Shown here one piece after another: positions 8,321-61,255 of a stretch of DNA of 64,000 nucleotides. Position numbers and translations under genes: made by a program. The stretch's first letter is position 1; every line of letters starts with the position of its first letter. The stretch is from positions 62,001 through 126,000 of the IMG/VR virus record IMGVR_UViG_3300021057_000274, one strand, 5' to 3'. Under the pieces are notes generated by a model. It ran no database searches and had not been told where the DNA came from. It saw nothing but the letters and a program-made list of their open reading frames with translations.

Positions 8321-8911
8321 GTGAAACTTTTCATAGACACGGAGTTCTCAGATTTTCTAGATCCCCATCTCATCTCGCTCGGAGCGGTGACCGAGGACCT
8401 CATGAACGAGTACTACGTTGAGATCAGCGACTACGATCGCCGGCTCTCATCGAGCTTCGTCAGAGAGGTCGTCGAGCCCCTCCTCGATCTCCCAAAGCAC
8501 GGCAAGACGTACATGCAAGCCTCGCTCGAGTTCGGCCTCTGGCTGGGTGAGCTCGCTCAAGGATTGCCTGGGGACGAGAAGCTCTACGTCACGGTTGACT
8601 ATGCGACCGACTGGGAGCTGATGCTCGACCTGCTTCAAACTGACCTGAGCCTCCTGCCCAAGGTTAACAAGGCGTTCACTCTGATCAACAATGATCTGCT
8701 CCATCGCGTCGTGATCCGGTGCAGTCAGCTCGCGGTGCCGAACATGAATCAGAAGTGCGAGGGTGCGGCCGAGGCCTTCGGCCAGGGCCTAATGAGCTAC
8801 TTCGTCGAGAACAAGCTTCCGATCCACCACGCTCTCAACGATGCTAAGGCGAACGCTCACGGGTGGCGGAACGCGATGACGTGGATTGAGAAGAACGTGC
8901 ACCCGATCTAG
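8321..8911 (+). CDS. DEDDh 3'-5' exonuclease
   Basis: FIDTEF...D...HHALND. Confidence 0.85.
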   Translation: MKLFIDTEFSDFLDPHLISLGAVTEDLMNEYYVEISDYDRRLSSSFVREVVEPLLDLPKHGKTYMQASLEFGLWLGELAQGLPGDEKLYVTVDYATDWELMLDLLQTDLSLLPKVNKAFTLINNDLLHRVVIRCSQLAVPNMNQKCEGAAEAFGQGLMSYFVENKLPIHHALNDAKANAHGWRNAMTWIEKNVHPI

Positions 8912-9048: not shown

Positions 9049-9471
9049 ATGAAGATTCTTGAAACCCTGCTTAGCGTCGTTGAAGCTAAGACCTCATCTG
9101 ACGACTCAGACCTCGCCAAGAAGGTCAAGGCCGCGCTAGTCGGGAAGACCGTCAAGGCCTTCGGTGGCAAGCCAGGTCTCTACGCCAAGCACGACGGGCC
9201 AGTTAAGTTTGTGATCACGAACACGCGAACGATCACGTACGACCACGACAGCCTGGCTCACTTCGCCTCGCTGAACGTCTACCTCGCGCTTGAGGCTAAG
9301 AATCACATCTACAGGCTAGATTTCATCGGTGACCTGTACACCGACGAAGGCCTCGAGAACGAGATCCGCAAGCTCCTCAAGCCGATCAAGCTGATCACCA
9401 AGATCAGCTACTCCGAGTCGGGCATGCAAGGTAAGGACTTCGTTAACTTCGACCTGCGGCTCGTCGACTAG
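9049..9471 (+). CDS. hypothetical, putative virion internal protein
   Basis: TAAATA at 9038; MKILE N-terminus. Confidence 0.7.
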   Translation: MKILETLLSVVEAKTSSDDSDLAKKVKAALVGKTVKAFGGKPGLYAKHDGPVKFVITNTRTITYDHDSLAHFASLNVYLALEAKNHIYRLDFIGDLYTDEGLENEIRKLLKPIKLITKISYSESGMQGKDFVNFDLRLVD

Positions 9472-9545
9472 TTCTTCTGGACTACACGTCCGCAAAAGGT
9501 GTTTACTTTCTGACTGGACCGTGTTATGATGCTTCCATTGCGGCT

Positions 9546-9553
9546 TATAAATA
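9546..9553 (+). promoter_or_regulatory. T4-type late promoter TATAAATA ahead of tRNA cluster 1
   Basis: Exact TATAAATA 13 nt before tRNA; an early-type promoter also lies at ~9503-9533. Confidence 0.6.
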
Positions 9554-10581: not shown

Positions 10582-10683
10582 GCGGGGTCGAGAAGTGGAG
10601 AACTAGGAAGAAATTCTGAGGTTCGCATCTCACTGGCCTCATAAGCCAGACAAGGCAGCGTTCAAATCCTGCCCCCGCAACCA
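10582..10683 (+). tRNA. tRNA-Met(CAU)-like with enlarged D loop
   Basis: gcgggg/ccccgc acceptor, CTCATAA loop, CCA; D stem gaga/tctc encloses ~34 nt. Confidence 0.65.
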
Positions 10684-10759
10684 GTAGAAGCCCGCAACGG
10701 GTCTACGCCAACCGGCTTTAAGAAGAAAGGCTGTTAGCCGGTCAGCCTCAAGGAGCAGT

Positions 10760-11587
10760 ATGATGTACAACAACAAGCTCGCCGTGGCGATCCTCAATAA
10801 CGGCCAGGTGTTGCGCGAACGCGGCGACACCGTCTACCTCCCCTTTGGTTCAGAGTACGCCATCCGCGTCAAGAACCTCAACACGACCAAGGCATCGGTC
10901 AAGGTTGAGATCGACGGCAAGGAGGCGACCGAGGGAGTAGCGCTCATCATCGACCCTAACGAGAGCTTCGACCTCGAGCGCTTCATCAAGAACGGCAACC
11001 TCAACCAGGGAAACCGCTTCAAGTTCATCCAGCGCACCGCGGCAGTCGCGAGGCATCGCGGCGTCAGCATCGACGACGGGCTGATCCGCGTCACGTTCCA
11101 GTTCGAGCGTCCCTACGTGCGCCCGAGCACGTGGCCATGGGTTGAACGTCGACGCAGCAGCTGGACTCTCGGCGGCACTCCCTACGGCAGGCGCTCCACC
11201 GACAACGGGAGAAGCTCTTGGACCGCAGGAGGTCTCGGATCAAGCGGGAGCTCTTACAGCGCTAGCGCCTCTAACTCCGTGCTTCGGTCGAAGTCATCAA
11301 CTGTCTACGACGGTGACGCGCAGTGCTCGCTAGAACCAGATCCGGTCGGAGTCACAGCGGCTGGAAGCGTCTCTGACCAGCAGTTTCAAGTCGTCAGCTC
11401 TCTCAATCTCGATCCTCAAGAGCACGTCATGGTGCTCCGCTTGCTCGGAGAGTCCGCCGAGACGAAGATCAAGGTGACGAAGCCGCTGACGGTCAAGTCG
11501 AAGCCCAAGTGCTCCTCGTGCGGCTTGAAGTGCAAGTCGTCCTGGAGATCTTGTCCGCGATGCAGCACTAGCCTCGAGATCGTCTAG
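10760..11587 (+). CDS. hypothetical protein with C-terminal zinc ribbon
   Basis: GGAG RBS; CSSC..CPRC. Confidence 0.8.
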   Translation: MMYNNKLAVAILNNGQVLRERGDTVYLPFGSEYAIRVKNLNTTKASVKVEIDGKEATEGVALIIDPNESFDLERFIKNGNLNQGNRFKFIQRTAAVARHRGVSIDDGLIRVTFQFERPYVRPSTWPWVERRRSSWTLGGTPYGRRSTDNGRSSWTAGGLGSSGSSYSASASNSVLRSKSSTVYDGDAQCSLEPDPVGVTAAGSVSDQQFQVVSSLNLDPQEHVMVLRLLGESAETKIKVTKPLTVKSKPKCSSCGLKCKSSWRSCPRCSTSLEIV

Positions 11588-16139: not shown

Positions 16140-16697
16140 TTGAAGTTCAAAGCTTTTCTCGCTGAGTCGGTCACCTTCGGCGCGACGATCCATCGCGTAG
16201 AGAAGGACGGGCAGCGCTCGCATGACTTCACTCCGTTCGAGAAGGAGAAGGAGATCGACTGTCGTGAGTGCCACTACCACGGCAAGTCCGAGCACTGCTG
16301 GATGTGCAAGGGAACGGGAAAGGAGAAGGTTTGGGTGACCGACTACGACAAGATTCAGCTCTCAAACTCGGGCGCGCTCGCCTTCTTGAGCGCGATCGGT
16401 GAGAAGGTCAACGGCGACGAGAGCTTAGTCGGCGGGTGGGATAACTCGGAGCTCCCTGAGCTCCGACGGAGGCTCATTCGGATGAAGAACGGCGACCTAA
16501 AGCACCATGAGACGCCACCGAGCGATGAGCAGCGCGTCCGCGGGGTCAAGCATGACGGAAACGTAGCGACGATCGAGCGCGGCCCTCGCATGATCAGTTA
16601 CGGACGAACCGCCGCACAGTACGGCGAGCTGATCGACGACTTGCTCAAGCTCATCGACTTCGCTCAGAAGCACGACGCAGGAGTGAGCTGGGCATGA
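16140..16697 (+). CDS. hypothetical with CxxC..CxxCxGxG zinc finger
   Basis: MKFKAFLAE start; CREC..CWMCKGTG. Confidence 0.75.
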   Translation: MKFKAFLAESVTFGATIHRVEKDGQRSHDFTPFEKEKEIDCRECHYHGKSEHCWMCKGTGKEKVWVTDYDKIQLSNSGALAFLSAIGEKVNGDESLVGGWDNSELPELRRRLIRMKNGDLKHHETPPSDEQRVRGVKHDGNVATIERGPRMISYGRTAAQYGELIDDLLKLIDFAQKHDAGVSWA

Positions 16698-17325: not shown

Positions 17326-17805
17326 GTGGCGCAAGTCTTTGACCTGAATGAGCTTCTTCACGAGGACGCGCTGCCTTGTAGCTTCGCGTATCTCGACATC
17401 GACGAGCTTCAGATGACGGTCGGGGACTTCTTCTCACGCAACTACGCTCGCGACCTGGTCAACTTCACCCCGATCGACTACCCGGGCTCGCAGCACAAGC
17501 GCGTGCTTCAAGCGTTTCTCCTGCGTCAGCCGATTCCCCGTTTCATCCTCGCCAACAATGACTCTAGCGGCGCCCTGAAGATTCTCAAGGGCCACGCGAT
17601 CATCGAGGCGATGGAGTACGTCTATCGCAATTACAAGAGCACCGACAGAGCGCTCGCCCGCCGTGTCCTGACCTCGATGATCACCTTCACGATCGTTCGT
17701 CGACACAGCGAAGCTCACAAACCCTTCGGTCGATTCGGTATCGACAACGAGACGCTCTACCTGAACTTCCTCAAGTTTCTCGACGCGTGCAACGAGTCGC
17801 GCTGA
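17326..17805 (+). CDS. hypothetical, weak DUF262/ParB-like
   Basis: LL..PIP.F.L segment; GGAGG RBS; early promoter upstream. Confidence 0.5.
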   Translation: MAQVFDLNELLHEDALPCSFAYLDIDELQMTVGDFFSRNYARDLVNFTPIDYPGSQHKRVLQAFLLRQPIPRFILANNDSSGALKILKGHAIIEAMEYVYRNYKSTDRALARRVLTSMITFTIVRRHSEAHKPFGRFGIDNETLYLNFLKFLDACNESR

Positions 17806-17987
17806 GTCTCGTCGCTCTCTGCCTCACAGGATGCGCCTCGGTCTGCCCTGAAGACACCCAGCGCCACGTCATCGCGAAGACGGTCGGCGGGCTCACCCAG
17901 TACTCGGTACCTTATGTCAGCCGAATGCCGGTACCGGTCTACGCGGAAATTCCAGTCACCGTCAGCGTCTGCCGCCCGGTCGAGTAG
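17787..17987 (+). CDS. small putative lipoprotein
   Basis: Hydrophobic N-terminus with LTGC lipobox. Confidence 0.55.
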   Translation: MQRVALSLVALCLTGCASVCPEDTQRHVIAKTVGGLTQYSVPYVSRMPVPVYAEIPVTVSVCRPVE

Positions 17988-18049
17988 TTCACAAGAACTA
18001 ACGGCAGTGTTTACAAGCTACTAGATTCCGATTACAATTACTCCAAGTT

Positions 18050-18422
18050 GCACGGAGGTCCGCAAGGCTCAAGTCGGACTAGGCAGGCCCCACAAGGGTC
18101 GAACAGCAGTTCGAGCCTCCCACGCAACCCAGTTACGAAGGTTCTCCGGGTGGACTCCGGGGAAGAGATCGCAGTATAACGCCAGACCCTGTCGGTTAAG
18201 AGCCAGGGACCAACCGGTGAGACCGTGGACGCCGAGAGGCAGAGGTCAAGTCCGGGAACCCCGCAGGGCGGACTGGGTATAGCGGCCGATCGTAACGCTC
18301 TGTGGAATTCGTTTTGGATCCGCGGCTGGTGCAGTACGCAGTTCGCCACTACGCGCTGAGGTACCGAGGTGAAGAGGCTCCAGATAGACGGCCGTCTAGC
18401 TGGAGCGGATAGGGTCCAAAAC
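18050..18422 (+). ncRNA. unassigned ~370-nt structured RNA
   Basis: TTTACA-N17-TACAAT promoter; multiple nested stems, GNRA loops; no credible ORF. Confidence 0.55.
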
Positions 18423-18532
18423 AAATTGCACAAAGTTGTTTACAAGCGAGGGAGACTGTGATACCATCGCTCTTCGAGTTGCACATGATTAACCTTTTCG
18501 GAAAATTGAGCACCGGTATAAATACCAGCACA

Positions 18533-18655
18533 ATGAGAACCTCCTTTACAAAACCAGCGCAAATTAGGACCGCCGCCGGCGAGCATCGAGAGACGATGCA
18601 GCCGTGCGTCAATCCTGATACGCGCTCCTCGATCGGAGGCGGAAGCTCAAACTAA
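18533..18655 (+). CDS. 40-aa putative leader peptide
   Basis: Follows TATAAATA 18517; overlaps antiterminator arm. Confidence 0.5.
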   Translation: MRTSFTKPAQIRTAAGEHRETMQPCVNPDTRSSIGGGSSN

Positions 18656-18718
18656 CGAGATCTTCCGCTAAGGCAGCACCCGGTCGAGGGGTCCAGAGAT
18701 GGACCCCTCATTCGTTTT
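18625..18718 (+). promoter_or_regulatory. attenuator (antiterminator/terminator pair) upstream of main tRNA array
   Basis: 18625-36 pairs 12 bp with 18680-91, which overlaps terminator stem 18686-94/18701-09 plus U-rich tail. Confidence 0.65.
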
Positions 18719-18748
18719 GGAGTCAAGCGGTTGAAGTTGTAGCACGAT

Positions 18749-18824
18749 GCGCCTGTAGCTCAGTGGAGAGAGTGCCGCGCTACGAACGCGGAGGTCGGGG
18801 GTTCGATCCCCTCCAGGCGTGCCA
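18749..18824 (+). tRNA. tRNA-Arg(ACG)
   Basis: Cloverleaf, CCA. Confidence 0.95.
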
Positions 18825-19028
18825 GAGGTTAAGTCGATGACCTCGATGTAACACCTAGAAGTCGACAACGCCGGTGAATCAGGGCGTGGGGAACCAAGTA
18901 CTGGTTGGATGCTGAAATGAAGCCGCGGTTTTACCCTTAAGCGCGGTGGATGACTGAGAAAGGGCGCTGTAGCCGGTCTAGCATGGGTGTCGAAGTCGAC
19001 TCCCCCTCGATCGGAGCGGTGACAAGAT

Positions 19029-19100
19029 ACGCCCGCCGATGGATTTTCGGCGCCAGGTCTTCTAAACCAGGATAGGAGGGTTCGATTCCTTCCGGGCGTG
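19029..19100 (+). tRNA. tRNA-Arg(UCU), no genomic CCA
   Basis: Loop CTTCTAA; A-A mismatch in anticodon stem. Confidence 0.75.
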
Positions 19101-19103
19101 CCT

Positions 19104-19177
19104 TCCCACATAGCTCAATGGTAGAGCCGCTGGTTGTGAACCAGATTGCCCGGGTCCGATTCCCGGTGTGGGACCCA
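19104..19177 (+). tRNA. tRNA-His(GUG)
   Basis: Loop TTGTGAA, C73, CCA. Confidence 0.9.
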
Positions 19178-19193
19178 GTAGTTGCAGTTCAAT

Positions 19194-19286
19194 TCCTCGG
19201 TACTCTAACGGTAAGAGACCTGGCTGTTAACCAGACGTATCCCGCCACCGAGCGGTATGGAGGTTCGAGTCCTCCCTGAGGAGCCA
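19194..19286 (+). tRNA. tRNA-Asn(GUU) with long variable region
   Basis: Loop CTGTTAA, G73, ~23-nt variable region. Confidence 0.85.
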
Positions 19287-19364: not shown

Positions 19365-19375
19365 CAATTCAGTAA

Positions 19376-19441
19376 CCGGGAAGTCCTAGTGACGTATTGC
19401 CGCGGCTGCCATCGTTGGCACGTAGGCTAGGACTTCCCGGT
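19376..19441. repeat. 15-bp perfect inverted repeat hairpin
   Basis: accgggaagtcctag/ctaggacttcccggt. Confidence 0.8.
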
Positions 19442-19455
19442 AGAAGTACAACATT

Positions 19456-19530
19456 GGCTCATTGATGAATGGGTTATCATACTACCCTGTCACGGTAGGT
19501 TAGCGGGTTCGAGTCCCGCATGGGTCGCCA
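19456..19530 (+). tRNA. tRNA-Asp(GUC)
   Basis: Loop CTGTCAC, G73, CCA. Confidence 0.95.
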
Positions 19531-19534
19531 AAAT

Positions 19535-19615
19535 GCGCTTCGGGAGGTTGAATCTCAACAGGTCGGGTCGCTCCCGTCTGTAAAACATGGGTTAAATTCC
19601 TGTGGAAGCGCGCCA
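19535..19615 (+). ncRNA. tRNA-like RNA with non-canonical core
   Basis: gcgcttc/gaagcgc-G-CCA, degenerate T arm, no normal anticodon arm. Confidence 0.55.
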
Positions 19616-19660
19616 AAATTAGAGGCTGACGATTCTGGGCGGCAATCTAGAGTCGGCGGT

Positions 19661-19767
19661 TTGTCGTTGAGGGTGGCTCCTCAGGACCCCGAGTAGGACG
19701 GTGAGATCTTGCCGGATCGAGCCGTTTGAAACGGGTCCTGTCGGTGGTTCGATTCCACCACGACTTC
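19661..19767 (+). ncRNA. tRNA-like RNA with expanded anticodon arm
   Basis: gtcgt/acgac, D-like hairpin, ggaccc/gggtcc enclosing ~45 nt, canonical T arm. Confidence 0.5.
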
Positions 19768-19954
19768 ACTCTAACCCTCTTCATGAAGCTGTGGGTAGAT
19801 CACCCTGCCACAAATCGGGTGATGAGGTCCGATCGCCTTCGTCCGTGGCATGCATGGCGCCAGGGCGATACCCCAGCAGTAACTGCGGCCGTCACCGAAC
19901 TTTATGCGAGAAAGTTCAGCGGTGACGAGGAGGAGGCGAACTGCTCGTTCAGTT

Positions 19955-20033: not shown

Positions 20034-20109
20034 CTGGGTGTAGGTCAGCGGCGAGACTGCCTGGTCCGGAGCCAGGAGGCCGTGGGTTCGAGTCCCACCA
20101 CCCAGACCA
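20034..20109 (+). tRNA. tRNA-Pro(CGG), C33
   Basis: C1-G72, A73; loop TCCGGAG. Confidence 0.9.
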
Positions 20110-20149
20110 AAGCGGCCCCCAGCGCCGCTCTAAGCCGAGGCTGGGGCAT

Positions 20150-20225
20150 CGGAGAGTCGCCTAGCGGCTATGGCGCCTGCTTTGGGAGCAGGATACCGTG
20201 GGTTCGAGTCCCACCTTTCCGACCA
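20150..20225 (+). tRNA. tRNA-Pro(UGG)
   Basis: Loop TTTGGGA, CCA. Confidence 0.95.
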
Positions 20226-22131: not shown

Positions 22132-22180
22132 CACAACGTCCCTCCACGCCTCTCAACGATGCGCACCCAGGAGGGCCTCT

Positions 22181-61180: not shown

Positions 61181-61255
61181 GCTCCCTTAGCTCAGCGGCA
61201 GAGTACGGGACTCTAAATCCTAGGGTCGTGGGTTCGAATCCCACAGGGAGCACCA
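61181..61255 (+). tRNA. amber-suppressor tRNA (anticodon CUA)
   Basis: Cloverleaf, loop CTCTAAA, A73, CCA; own TGATATAAT promoter. Confidence 0.88.

What the first reader, a model, noticed from the sequence alone, without database searches (positions are those of the whole stretch)
18023..18422. Unassigned ~370-nt multidomain structured RNA with its own promoter
Seen: TTTACA-N17-TACAAT, then three closed domains (ggagg/cctcc; acccagtt/gactgggt; ttttggatcc/gggtccaaaa) with many hairpins and GNRA loops (gcaa, gaga), and no credible ORF. A second similar promoter follows at 18441, and both are followed by GTTGCAC. Known: large ncRNAs such as GOLLD and ROOL sit beside phage tRNA clusters. I cannot match it to a family.
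Basis: partly seen in the sequence, partly recalled or inferred. Interest (0 to 1): 0.72.

Follow-up and report, generated by a model that had tools for sequence, protein, structure and literature searches.

The report
Orphan promoter-driven leader before phage tRNAs
The stretch is a real non-coding, promoter-fed region in front of a giant soil phage's tRNA gene array, but only its last third (a long hairpin) folds better than random sequence, and it has no relatives, covariation or transcript evidence, so it is best read as a variable operon leader with a processing hairpin and not as a new large structured RNA.

Summary
These are a strong sigma-70-type promoter (18010-18038), a second one (18439-18467), AGTTGCAC after both, the three complementary pairs, and no coding potential in any frame.

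The window lies in a 389-kb jumbo phage from a soil metagenome. The region sits in a 761-nt gene-free gap before the main tRNA array.

Support for a ~370-nt multidomain structured RNA is weak:
- Rfam gives no match, even at E<=10.
- The whole region folds no better than shuffles (z about -1), and 18046-18297 gives z = -0.2. Only the 3' hairpin domain (18298-18435) is significant (z about -3.4), and equally so on both strands.
- There is no terminator before 18686-18709.
- No homologue was found in GenBank phages, IMG/VR, JGI metagenomes, GTDB genomes or eight syntenic relatives.
- No RNA run holding it was listed. One soil metatranscriptome does carry neighbouring tRNA-spacer RNA.

The relatives keep the downstream module (TATAAATA, small ORF, terminator, tRNA-Arg). 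In the upstream slot they carry different promoter-driven RNAs closed by 17-28-bp stems that covary.

Best reading: a lineage-specific untranslated leader of the tRNA operon, with one long-stem processing or stability hairpin. Interest is low to moderate.

The parts
17787..17987 (+). Last protein-coding ORF before the gap. It is 66 aa with a lipoprotein-like signal and lipobox (L-T-G-C). It marks the upstream edge of the 761-nt non-coding gap.
   Evidence: codon LLR +0.15; lipobox read directly from the translation
18010..18038 (+). Promoter P1: TTTACA-N17-TACAAT. The expected transcript start is near 18045-18046.
   Evidence: 10/12 match; nine exact sites of this type in the 389-kb genome, all on +; the same TGTTTAC...TGnTAnnAT promoter type recurs in the syntenic relatives
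18046..18297 (+). It is GC-rich (63% over 18054-18282) and lineage-specific, with no fold beyond chance.
   Evidence: z = -0.23; helix probabilities unstable; no coding signal; no tRNA similarity; no homologue
18298..18435 (+). An imperfect 24-bp stem (arms 18298-18321 and 18412-18435) closes about 90 nt, including a near-perfect palindromic hairpin at 18377-18406. The 3' arm overlaps the TTGCACAAAG element just upstream of P2.
   Evidence: I1, I2; z about -3.4; pair probability 0.8-1.0
18439..18467 (+). Promoter P2: TTTACA-N17-TACCAT with a TG extension. It is preceded by TTGCACAAAGTTG, an upstream element shared with promoters of the related phages.
18477..18484 (+). Second copy of AGTTGCAC (the first is at 18046-18053). 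In four relatives the matching leader motif (GTTGTTGCAC or GTTGTTGTAC) pairs with a downstream GTGCAAC to close a variable insert.
18517..18524 (+). TATAAATA box. It is conserved as T[AG]TAAATA in all eight relatives, in most of them 5-10 nt before the small ORF's ATG, and is a probable phage-specific promoter.
18534..18656 (+). Small ORF of 40 aa, conserved in position in all relatives (33-43 aa; shared M-K/R..F..., ...IGG pattern). It has atypical codon usage.
   Evidence: LLR -0.39
18686..18709 (+). Intrinsic terminator (10-bp GC-rich stem followed by a T-rich tail). It is the first terminator downstream of P1 and is conserved in the relatives.
18749..18824 (+). tRNA-Arg(ACG), the first gene of the main tRNA array. 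A tRNA-Arg(ACG) also follows the module closely in most relatives.

Best explanation
The interval is the untranslated, promoter-proximal leader of the main tRNA operon of a 389-kb jumbo phage. It is not an autonomous large structured RNA.

Proposed mechanism:
1. Host RNA polymerase starts at P1 (inferred from the consensus match and from the strand-consistent recurrence of this promoter type).
2. There is no terminator, so transcription continues through P2, the TATAAATA/small-ORF module and the terminator at 18686-18709. By read-through it then enters the tRNA array (inferred).
3. The first ~250 nt (18046-18297) is lineage-specific filler without a defined fold (shown by shuffles).
4. The last ~140 nt (18298-18435) forms a long imperfect 24-bp stem closing a three-way junction (the fold is shown computationally).
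5. By analogy with the 17-28-bp covarying stems that close the small RNAs in the same slot in related phages, this hairpin most likely serves as a double-stranded processing or stabilising stalk. An RNase III-type cut there would separate the leader from the downstream RNA (inferred, untested).
For: - The gap is non-coding.
- P1 and P2 match a promoter type that is enriched and strand-consistent in this genome and is shared with relatives.
- There is no terminator between P1 and 18686.
- Only 18298-18435 folds beyond chance.
- Eight syntenic phage loci keep the TATAAATA, small ORF, terminator and tRNA-Arg module. Upstream of it the sequence is variable in length (about 260-770 nt) and content.
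- In relatives that slot holds stem-closed RNAs with 10 compensatory pairs in a 23-bp stem across only three sequences and z of -4 to -8.
- The AGTTGCAC start of P1 transcripts and the segment at 18296-18313 resemble the two strands of the leader stem of four relatives.
- The tRNA array is transcribed and processed in a soil metatranscriptome. One contig starts 2 nt after the CCA of tRNA-Arg, and an adapter-bounded fragment ends at a tRNA 3' end.
Against: - There is no direct transcript evidence for 18046-18435.
- RNase III cleavage is an analogy only.
- The hairpin is equally stable on the minus strand, so a DNA-level role is not excluded.
- The hairpin has no detectable sequence homology to the relatives' stems.
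- A functional fold for 18046-18297 cannot be excluded by energy statistics alone.
Confidence: 0.45

Rival explanations
1. One reading: a discrete, functional, novel multidomain structured small RNA of about 370 nt (or two RNAs, 18046-18297 and 18298-18435). It would be made from P1 and released by processing, with a function of its own, for example a decoy, a regulator or a protein scaffold.
For: - It has its own strong promoter and is non-coding.
- The same slot in relatives holds genuine structured RNAs with covariation.
- Domain 3 is significantly stable.
- The domain-2 closing helix reaches P = 0.82 in one context.
Against: - The overall fold is at chance level, and 18046-18297 gives z = -0.23.
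- It has no terminator.
- No homologue was found anywhere, so there is no covariation.
- There is no Rfam resemblance at E<=10.
- Nothing lies on it in the metatranscriptome that carries neighbouring spacer RNA.
Confidence: 0.2
2. Evolutionary debris: a decayed remnant of stem-closed or tRNA-like RNA genes and a duplicated promoter. It would be kept only because it is harmless, in a region shuffled by homing-endonuclease-driven exchange.
For: - The slot is hypervariable among relatives.
- Relatives' tRNA clusters are full of GIY-YIG/NUMOD3 endonuclease genes.
- P1 and P2 share the -35 context and AGTTGCAC, as after a duplication.
- The 12-mer ATTCGTTTTGGA recurs at 18307 and 18710 (I6).
- The first 250 nt are indistinguishable from random sequence.
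Against: - Phage genomes rarely keep 400 nt of junk under a strong promoter.
- The core between the repeats shows no residual similarity to the P2 unit (z about 0.8-1.1) or to tRNAs.
- The domain-3 stem is well preserved (24 bp, 3 mismatches).
Confidence: 0.25
3. A DNA-level element. The 18298-18435 inverted repeat, with its central palindrome at 18377-18406, would be a protein-binding or cruciform site that regulates the adjacent P2 promoter, or marks a recombination or replication site.
For: - The fold is as stable or more so on the minus strand (z -4.7 against -3.5).
- The 3' arm overlaps the conserved TTGCACAAAG upstream element, 3 nt from the -35 box of P2.
- The centre is a near-perfect palindrome (I2).
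Against: - The arms are 90 nt apart, and G-U pairs contribute on the + strand.
- No such palindrome lies beside the equivalent promoters in relatives.
- No candidate binding protein is identified.
Confidence: 0.1

Closest known systems
Leader and spacer segments with processing stems in polycistronic stable-RNA operons (rRNA operon RNase III stalks; phage T4 tRNA-cluster precursors with their two extra small stable RNAs). This comparison rests on general knowledge and was not tested here.
   Same: It is promoter-proximal untranslated RNA in front of a stable-RNA array, with a long double-stranded stem flanking an insert and no terminator of its own.
   Different: No cleavage has been shown. 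There is no sequence relationship, and the hairpin closes a 90-nt three-way junction, not a mature RNA of known function.
Stem-closed, often tRNA-like small RNAs in the same slot of related jumbo phages (L040 7512-7680, L038 14440-14606, L033 14498-14648, L041 8790-8935, G001/L031 minus strand). They are undescribed as far as I could find.
   Same: They hold the same position between the last ORF and the TATAAATA module, use the same promoter type, and are closed by a long stem.
   Different: Their stems are perfect over 17-28 bp, start at the transcript 5' end, covary and usually enclose a T-arm-like GGTTCGAAYCC hairpin. Here the stem is imperfect, starts 250 nt into the transcript and has no T-arm. 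Profile searches find no similarity.
GOLLD (RF01998) and ROOL (RF03087) large RNAs
   Same: They are large non-coding regions next to tRNA genes in phage DNA.
   Different: There is no covariance-model match even at E<=10 in a 1.4-kb search space. The region is also smaller, and no conserved multi-stem architecture is shown.
Bacterial Y RNAs (YrlA, RF02553; Chen et al. 2014, PMC4201824)
   Same: The relatives' RNAs share the general design of a long stem plus a tRNA-like module. YrlA-like RNAs are known in phages.
   Different: The genome has no TROVE/Ro60 gene. There is no YrlA model hit in the region or in L038. The region has no GNCGAAN0-1G motif and no D- or T-arm.

Membership tests
Any Rfam 15 family (including GOLLD, ROOL, RNase P RNA, tmRNA, 6S, SRP, group I/II introns, T-box, HEARO, raiA) | Covariance-model match at or near the gathering score | tested here: not met
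   No hit at gathering score in the window. No hit overlapping 18073-18655 at E<=10 in 17800-19200; the only match touching the finding is a 10-bit chance hit to a vertebrate lncRNA model at 17997-18072, E 0.9. The tmRNA model finds only tRNAs genome-wide.
Discrete bacterial/phage sRNA gene | Own promoter | tested here: met
   P1 matches 10/12 consensus positions, and the promoter type is enriched and strand-consistent. This is a consensus match only, not an activity assay.
Discrete bacterial/phage sRNA gene | Own terminator or defined 3' end | tested here: not met
   No terminator-like site lies between 18046 and 18686 on the + strand.
Discrete bacterial/phage sRNA gene | Detected transcript | tested here: inconclusive
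   No RNA run was listed for 18040-18430. The X3 metatranscriptome has contigs on neighbouring spacers but none here, at depth of only 2-4.
Structured RNA (general) | Folding energy below dinucleotide shuffles | tested here: not met
   Not met for the region as a whole: z -0.7 to -1.0 for the whole region, and -0.23 for 18046-18297. Met only for 18298-18435, with z about -3.4.
Structured RNA (general) | Covariation in homologues | not testable with these tools
   No homologue was found in GenBank phages, the related 345-kb phage G001, eight syntenic loci, IMG/VR, JGI metagenomes (only the source contig) or GTDB genomes. The DNA runs show no variants.
Relatives' stem-closed tRNA-like RNAs | 17-28-bp terminal stem formed by the transcript's 5' and 3' ends | tested here: not met
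   The 5' end pairs at best over 7-11 bp with 18298-18309, and that pairing competes with the domain-3 stem.
Relatives' stem-closed tRNA-like RNAs | T-arm-like hairpin next to the 3' strand, or sequence-profile similarity | tested here: not met
   No GGTTCGA-type T-arm. No tRNA similarity beyond shuffles. The nhmmer profile gives no hit in the genome.
Relatives' conserved 134-nt RNA between terminator and tRNA-Arg (model R1) | Covariance-model match | tested here: not met
   The relatives score 80-153 bits. The best hit in window 17900-19200 with filters off is 9 bits, on the terminator.
YrlA / Y RNA | Ro60 (TROVE) gene within a few kb, Rsr-binding motif, D/T-arm mimic | tested here: not met
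   PF05731 is absent from the 389-kb genome. The only YrlA hit in 17800-19200 is an 18-bit chance match on a T-arm at 19076-19127, outside the region. The defining criteria are taken from PMC4201824.

The most novel reading that the evidence does not exclude
XacN1-like jumbo phages may place a hypervariable cassette of promoter-driven, stem-closed small RNAs in front of their tRNA arrays. Some are tRNA-like and all differ between phages. They could be decoys or regulated precursors that interact with host tRNA-processing or tRNA-targeting defence enzymes. On this reading, 18046-18435 would be this phage's own functional, lineage-specific version of such an RNA.
Probability: 0.15. Interest if true: 0.6.

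Novelty: new member of a known kind. Interest (0 to 1): 0.3.

Why it matters
Taken as found, it is an ordinary if unusually long untranslated leader with a processing-type hairpin in a phage tRNA operon. It removes one candidate from the list of new large RNAs.

The comparative work points to something more useful. Jumbo phages related to this one carry real, covarying small RNAs in the same neighbourhood: stem-closed tRNA-like RNAs and a 134-nt conserved RNA. They also keep a conserved TATAAATA, small ORF and terminator module in front of their tRNA arrays. These are better targets for study than the orphan region itself, and they could bear on how giant phages express and protect their own tRNA sets.

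Tried and rejected
**Known RNA families.** Rfam was run at gathering score and at E<=10 and the tmRNA model genome-wide. Nothing matched. RNase P-like motifs that I noticed by eye (GGTTAAGAGCC, GAGGTCAAGTCCGGG) have no covariance-model support and occur in the wrong order.

**Coding and pseudogene.** Pfam on the 131-aa antisense ORF and the short sense ORFs, blastx against all ORFs of the genome and relatives and codon statistics all reject coding.

**Decayed tRNA.** ARAGORN, the tRNA covariance model, and local alignment to all 48 phage tRNAs are no better than shuffles.

**Tandem paralogy of the P1 and P2 units.** Only the promoter, AGTTGCAC and one 12-mer are shared. The core similarity is at chance.

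**Homologue hunts that found nothing:**
- blastn against GenBank phages;
- exact-peptide scans with two neighbouring proteins;
- a protein search with the adjacent 159-aa gene, which found only itself;
- the promoter+AGTTGCAC pattern in IMG/VR, which gave only chance coding hits in AT-rich phages;
- blast against the related phage G001;
- nhmmer against eight syntenic loci;
- two-anchor patterns in metagenome, genome and viral collections;
- the relatives' promoter pattern in IMG/VR.

**Y RNA idea.** The genome has no TROVE gene, there is no YrlA hit, and the 275-aa and VWA proteins upstream show no TROVE signal.

**Relocated copy of the relatives' conserved 134-nt RNA.** The covariance-model search was negative.

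**Genome-wide long-stem scan.** It needed exact 9-mer seeds, so it missed domain 3, and its counts were only about twice the shuffles. It was not used as evidence.

Full report
**Context.** The window is bases 62001-126000 of a 389-kb IMG/VR virus record (98% complete). It was assembled from soil metagenomes; the source contig is Ga0196981_1000006. It is a jumbo phage with 41 tRNA genes in the window and 48 in the genome. It also encodes a CCA-adding-enzyme-like protein and an NAD kinase. Its terminase is 58-64% identical to a handful of IMG/VR contigs, including a complete 345-kb phage, G001. More distant protein matches are to Xanthomonas phage XacN1, Ralstonia phage RsoM2USA and huge uncultured phages.

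The finding lies in a 761-nt gene-free gap (17988-18748). The gap sits between a 66-aa lipoprotein-like ORF and tRNA-Arg(ACG), the first gene of the main tRNA array.

**Check of the observation.**
- P1 (TTTACA-N17-TACAAT) lies at 18010-18038.
- P2 (TTTACA-N17-TACCAT, with a TG extension) lies at 18439-18467.
- AGTTGCAC follows 8-10 nt after each -10 box. These are its only two occurrences in 64 kb.
- The three complementary pairs are present.

The promoter type is not a chance match. The scan found 10 sites in 9 kb against 3.1 +/- 1.7 in shuffles. Nine exact TTTACA-N16-18-TAnnnT sites exist in the genome, all on the + strand and several directly before genes.

The region is non-coding. Codon log-likelihood is negative in all six frames, while neighbouring genes score +0.15 to +0.69. 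Pfam finds nothing for the ORFs, including the 131-aa antisense ORF that spans the whole region. There is no pseudogene similarity.

**Is it a structured RNA?** Rfam 15 gives nothing at gathering score. It also gives nothing meaningful at E<=10 in a 1.4-kb search, where even very weak resemblances would be listed. Folding energies are as follows.
- The 380-nt region: z = -0.7 to -1.0 on either strand.
- The first 252 nt together: z = -0.23.
- Ensemble probabilities: the GGAGG/CCTCC helix is improbable (0.06-0.41), and the domain-2 closing helix depends on context (0.24-0.82).

Only the third domain is robust. Its stem extends to a 24-bp imperfect inverted repeat (18298-18321 / 18412-18435) that closes about 90 nt. 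That insert includes a near-perfect palindromic hairpin at 18377-18406. For this domain z is about -3.4 and pair probability is 0.8-1.0. It is equally or more stable on the minus strand (z = -4.7).

There is no terminator between P1 and the strong terminator at 18686-18709. A P1 transcript therefore cannot end at 18422 unless it is processed.

**Transcription.** One public RNA run (X3, a soil metatranscriptome) holds identical contigs from this phage. They cover part of an upstream gene (16342-16534), the spacer 18826-19090, which starts 2 nt after the encoded CCA of tRNA-Arg, and 19507-19932. An adapter-bounded fragment (20088-20222) ends 3 nt before the ARAGORN 3' end of tRNA-Pro(UGG). These ends look like processed RNA, so the tRNA array is expressed in that sample.

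Nothing lies on 18046-18435, and a search with the region alone listed no RNA run. Depth is only 2-4 and these are contigs, so this is weak negative evidence. It does argue against a highly abundant stable RNA.

**Homologues.** None was found.
- blastn against 50,697 GenBank phages gave no match.
- BLAST against the related phage G001 gave only chance hits.
- nhmmer against eight syntenic loci found nothing.
- Exact two-anchor or 21-mer patterns in JGI metagenomes, GTDB genomes and IMG/VR found only the source contig.
- The adjacent 159-aa gene has no relative among 5.8 billion proteins.
- The nearest relatives of the conserved HD-domain gene 4 kb upstream are 60% identical or less.
- The DNA runs show no variants.

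Covariation therefore cannot be tested.

**What the relatives show.** I fetched the neighbourhood of HD-gene homologues. Together with G001 this gave eight syntenic loci. All keep the gene order VWA protein, HD protein, a few small genes, gap, tRNA array, and in most the array starts with tRNA-Arg(ACG). All also keep a module that in our window is 18517-18709:
- a T[AG]TAAATA box;
- an ATG a few bases later, opening a 33-43-aa ORF with a recognisable shared pattern;
- a strong terminator.

TATAAATA is over-represented in our GC-rich genome: 8 copies, 7 of them on +. One lies about 13-16 nt before the first tRNA of the other cluster. In the relatives the box followed by N5-ATG precedes many genes. 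It is probably a phage-specific promoter.

Upstream of the module every phage differs, in length (about 260-770 nt) and in content. Several relatives carry one to four units there. Each unit has a promoter of the same type (TGTTTAC...TGnTAnnAT) followed by a 150-250-nt RNA closed by a 17-28-bp perfect stem. Most of these RNAs enclose a T-arm-like hairpin. One scores 30 bits with the tRNA model, and one ends in a CCA-bearing acceptor-like stem. Across only three homologous copies, 10 of 23 stem pairs show double compensatory changes. Their z-scores are -4 to -8. These are genuine structured RNAs.

Five relatives also carry a conserved RNA of about 134 nt between the terminator and tRNA-Arg, with 16 of 33 pairs covarying. 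A covariance model of it scores 80-153 bits on the relatives and nothing in our window.

Our region matches neither class by sequence profile. It has no T-arm and no tRNA similarity.

**Positional homology.** In four relatives, the transcript from the promoter nearest the module begins with GAAGTTGTTG[C/T]AC. This pairs with a downstream GTGCAACATCTTGAAACC to close a variable insert of 46-130 nt. In our phage the P1 transcript starts with AAGTTGCACGGAG. The segment 18296-18313 resembles the relatives' 3' strand in 13 of 18 positions by my own reading. It can pair with the P1 5' end (7-11 bp; P = 0.76 when the RNA is cut at 18423) or with the TTGCACAAAG element before P2 (P = 0.8 in longer contexts).

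So 18046-18297 occupies the place of the variable insert in the leader. The hairpin plus P2 looks like an extra unit inserted before the module. An alternative mapping is P1 = the relatives' first promoter and P2 = their second. Both mappings put the finding in a hypervariable slot.

**Interpretation.** The best-supported reading is that the interval is a lineage-specific untranslated leader of the tRNA operon, fed by P1. Its one defined structural element is the 18298-18435 hairpin. By analogy with the covarying long stems of the relatives, and with processing stalks of stable-RNA operons (general knowledge), this hairpin probably acts as a double-stranded processing or stabilising element.

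What is shown: the region is non-coding, it has a promoter consensus, it lacks a terminator, the hairpin is stable, and the slot is hypervariable. What is inferred: transcription from P1, read-through, and RNase III-type processing.

The rivals are listed with confidences in the report sections:
- evolutionary debris in a region churned by the homing endonucleases that crowd the relatives' tRNA clusters;
- a DNA-level palindrome regulating P2.

**Comparison with known systems.** The region is not GOLLD, ROOL, RNase P RNA, tmRNA or any other Rfam family. It is not a Y RNA. The genome has no TROVE gene, there is no YrlA match, and the features that define YrlA in PMC4201824 are absent. It resembles leader and spacer RNA of stable-RNA operons in how it would work, and the relatives' stem-closed RNAs in where it sits.

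**Verdict.** The novelty of the region itself is low: it is a new, orphan example of a leader with a long hairpin. Interest is 0.3. The more interesting material is in the relatives and in the side observations listed separately.

Noticed in passing
window 22140-22176 (+): A clean match to the abiF RNA motif (RF03085): 48 bits against a gathering score of 37, full length, with the conserved loop. It sits between tRNA-Gln and tRNA-Phe inside the phage tRNA array. A phage-borne copy of an RNA normally found beside abortive-infection genes could be a counter-defence decoy.
   Followed up: partly
window 19194-19286 (+); also L031 9419-9512 (-), L040 about 8419-8511, L041 about 9448-9540: A 93-nt tRNA with a GUU (Asn) anticodon and a long extra arm sits next to a normal 75-nt tRNA-Asn(GUU). 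The long-arm version is conserved in the related phages. A class-II-shaped tRNA reading Asn codons is unusual.
   Followed up: no
window 61181-61255 (+): A tRNA with a CUA anticodon (amber suppressor; ARAGORN labels it Pyl), scoring 65 bits with the tRNA model. It hints at TAG read-through or recoding in this phage.
   Followed up: no
window 18826-19100 (+): A 200-nt spacer is followed by a cryptic tRNA-like element (19028-19100; UCU in the anticodon-like loop; tRNA-Sec model 28 bits; missed by ARAGORN). The soil metatranscriptome X3 has an identical contig covering 18826-19090, starting 2 nt after the CCA of tRNA-Arg. This spacer persists as RNA.
   Followed up: partly
window 18517-18709 (+); L033 14818-15000, L034 14734-14900, L036 16800-17000, L038 15042-15215, L039 15427-15630, L040 7862-8045, L041 9119-9320, L031 minus strand: A conserved module lies in front of the tRNA array in all nine phages: a T[AG]TAAATA box, a 33-43-aa ORF starting a few bases later (shared M-K..F / ..IGG pattern, odd codon usage), and a strong terminator. 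The whole P2 unit has MFE z about -5.
   Followed up: partly
window 9546-9553 and 18517-18524; genome-wide: TATAAATA occurs 8 times in a 57%-GC genome, 7 of them on +. One copy lies about 13-16 nt before the first tRNA of cluster 1. In the relatives, T[AG]TAAATA-N5-ATG precedes many genes, including GIY-YIG endonuclease genes. This is probably a phage-specific (T4-late-like) promoter that gives leaderless mRNAs.
   Followed up: partly
L040 7512-7680, L038 14440-14606 and 14606-14782, L033 14498-14648, L039 15054-15202, L041 8790-8935, L031 (minus strand) about 10590-10840: Related phages carry promoter-driven 150-250-nt RNAs closed by 17-28-bp perfect stems. Ten of 23 stem pairs are compensatory across three copies, and z is -4 to -8. 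Most enclose a T-arm-like hairpin. They match no Rfam family and look like an undescribed class.
   Followed up: partly
L033 15030-15163, L040 8074-8206, L038 15246-15386, L034 14930-15057, L031 9779-9929 (-): A conserved RNA of about 134 nt lies between the terminator and tRNA-Arg in five relatives, with 16 of 33 predicted pairs covarying. It matches no Rfam family and is absent from this window (model R1).
   Followed up: yes
window 19375-19441 (+); genome 373300-373374: Perfect 16-bp and 23-bp (21 pairs) hairpins lie in tRNA-cluster spacers of this phage. They are further candidates for processing stems.
   Followed up: no
window 17787-17987 (+): A 66-aa ORF with a lipoprotein signal and lipobox (L-T-G-C) overlaps the end of the preceding gene. 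It has no homologues.
   Followed up: no
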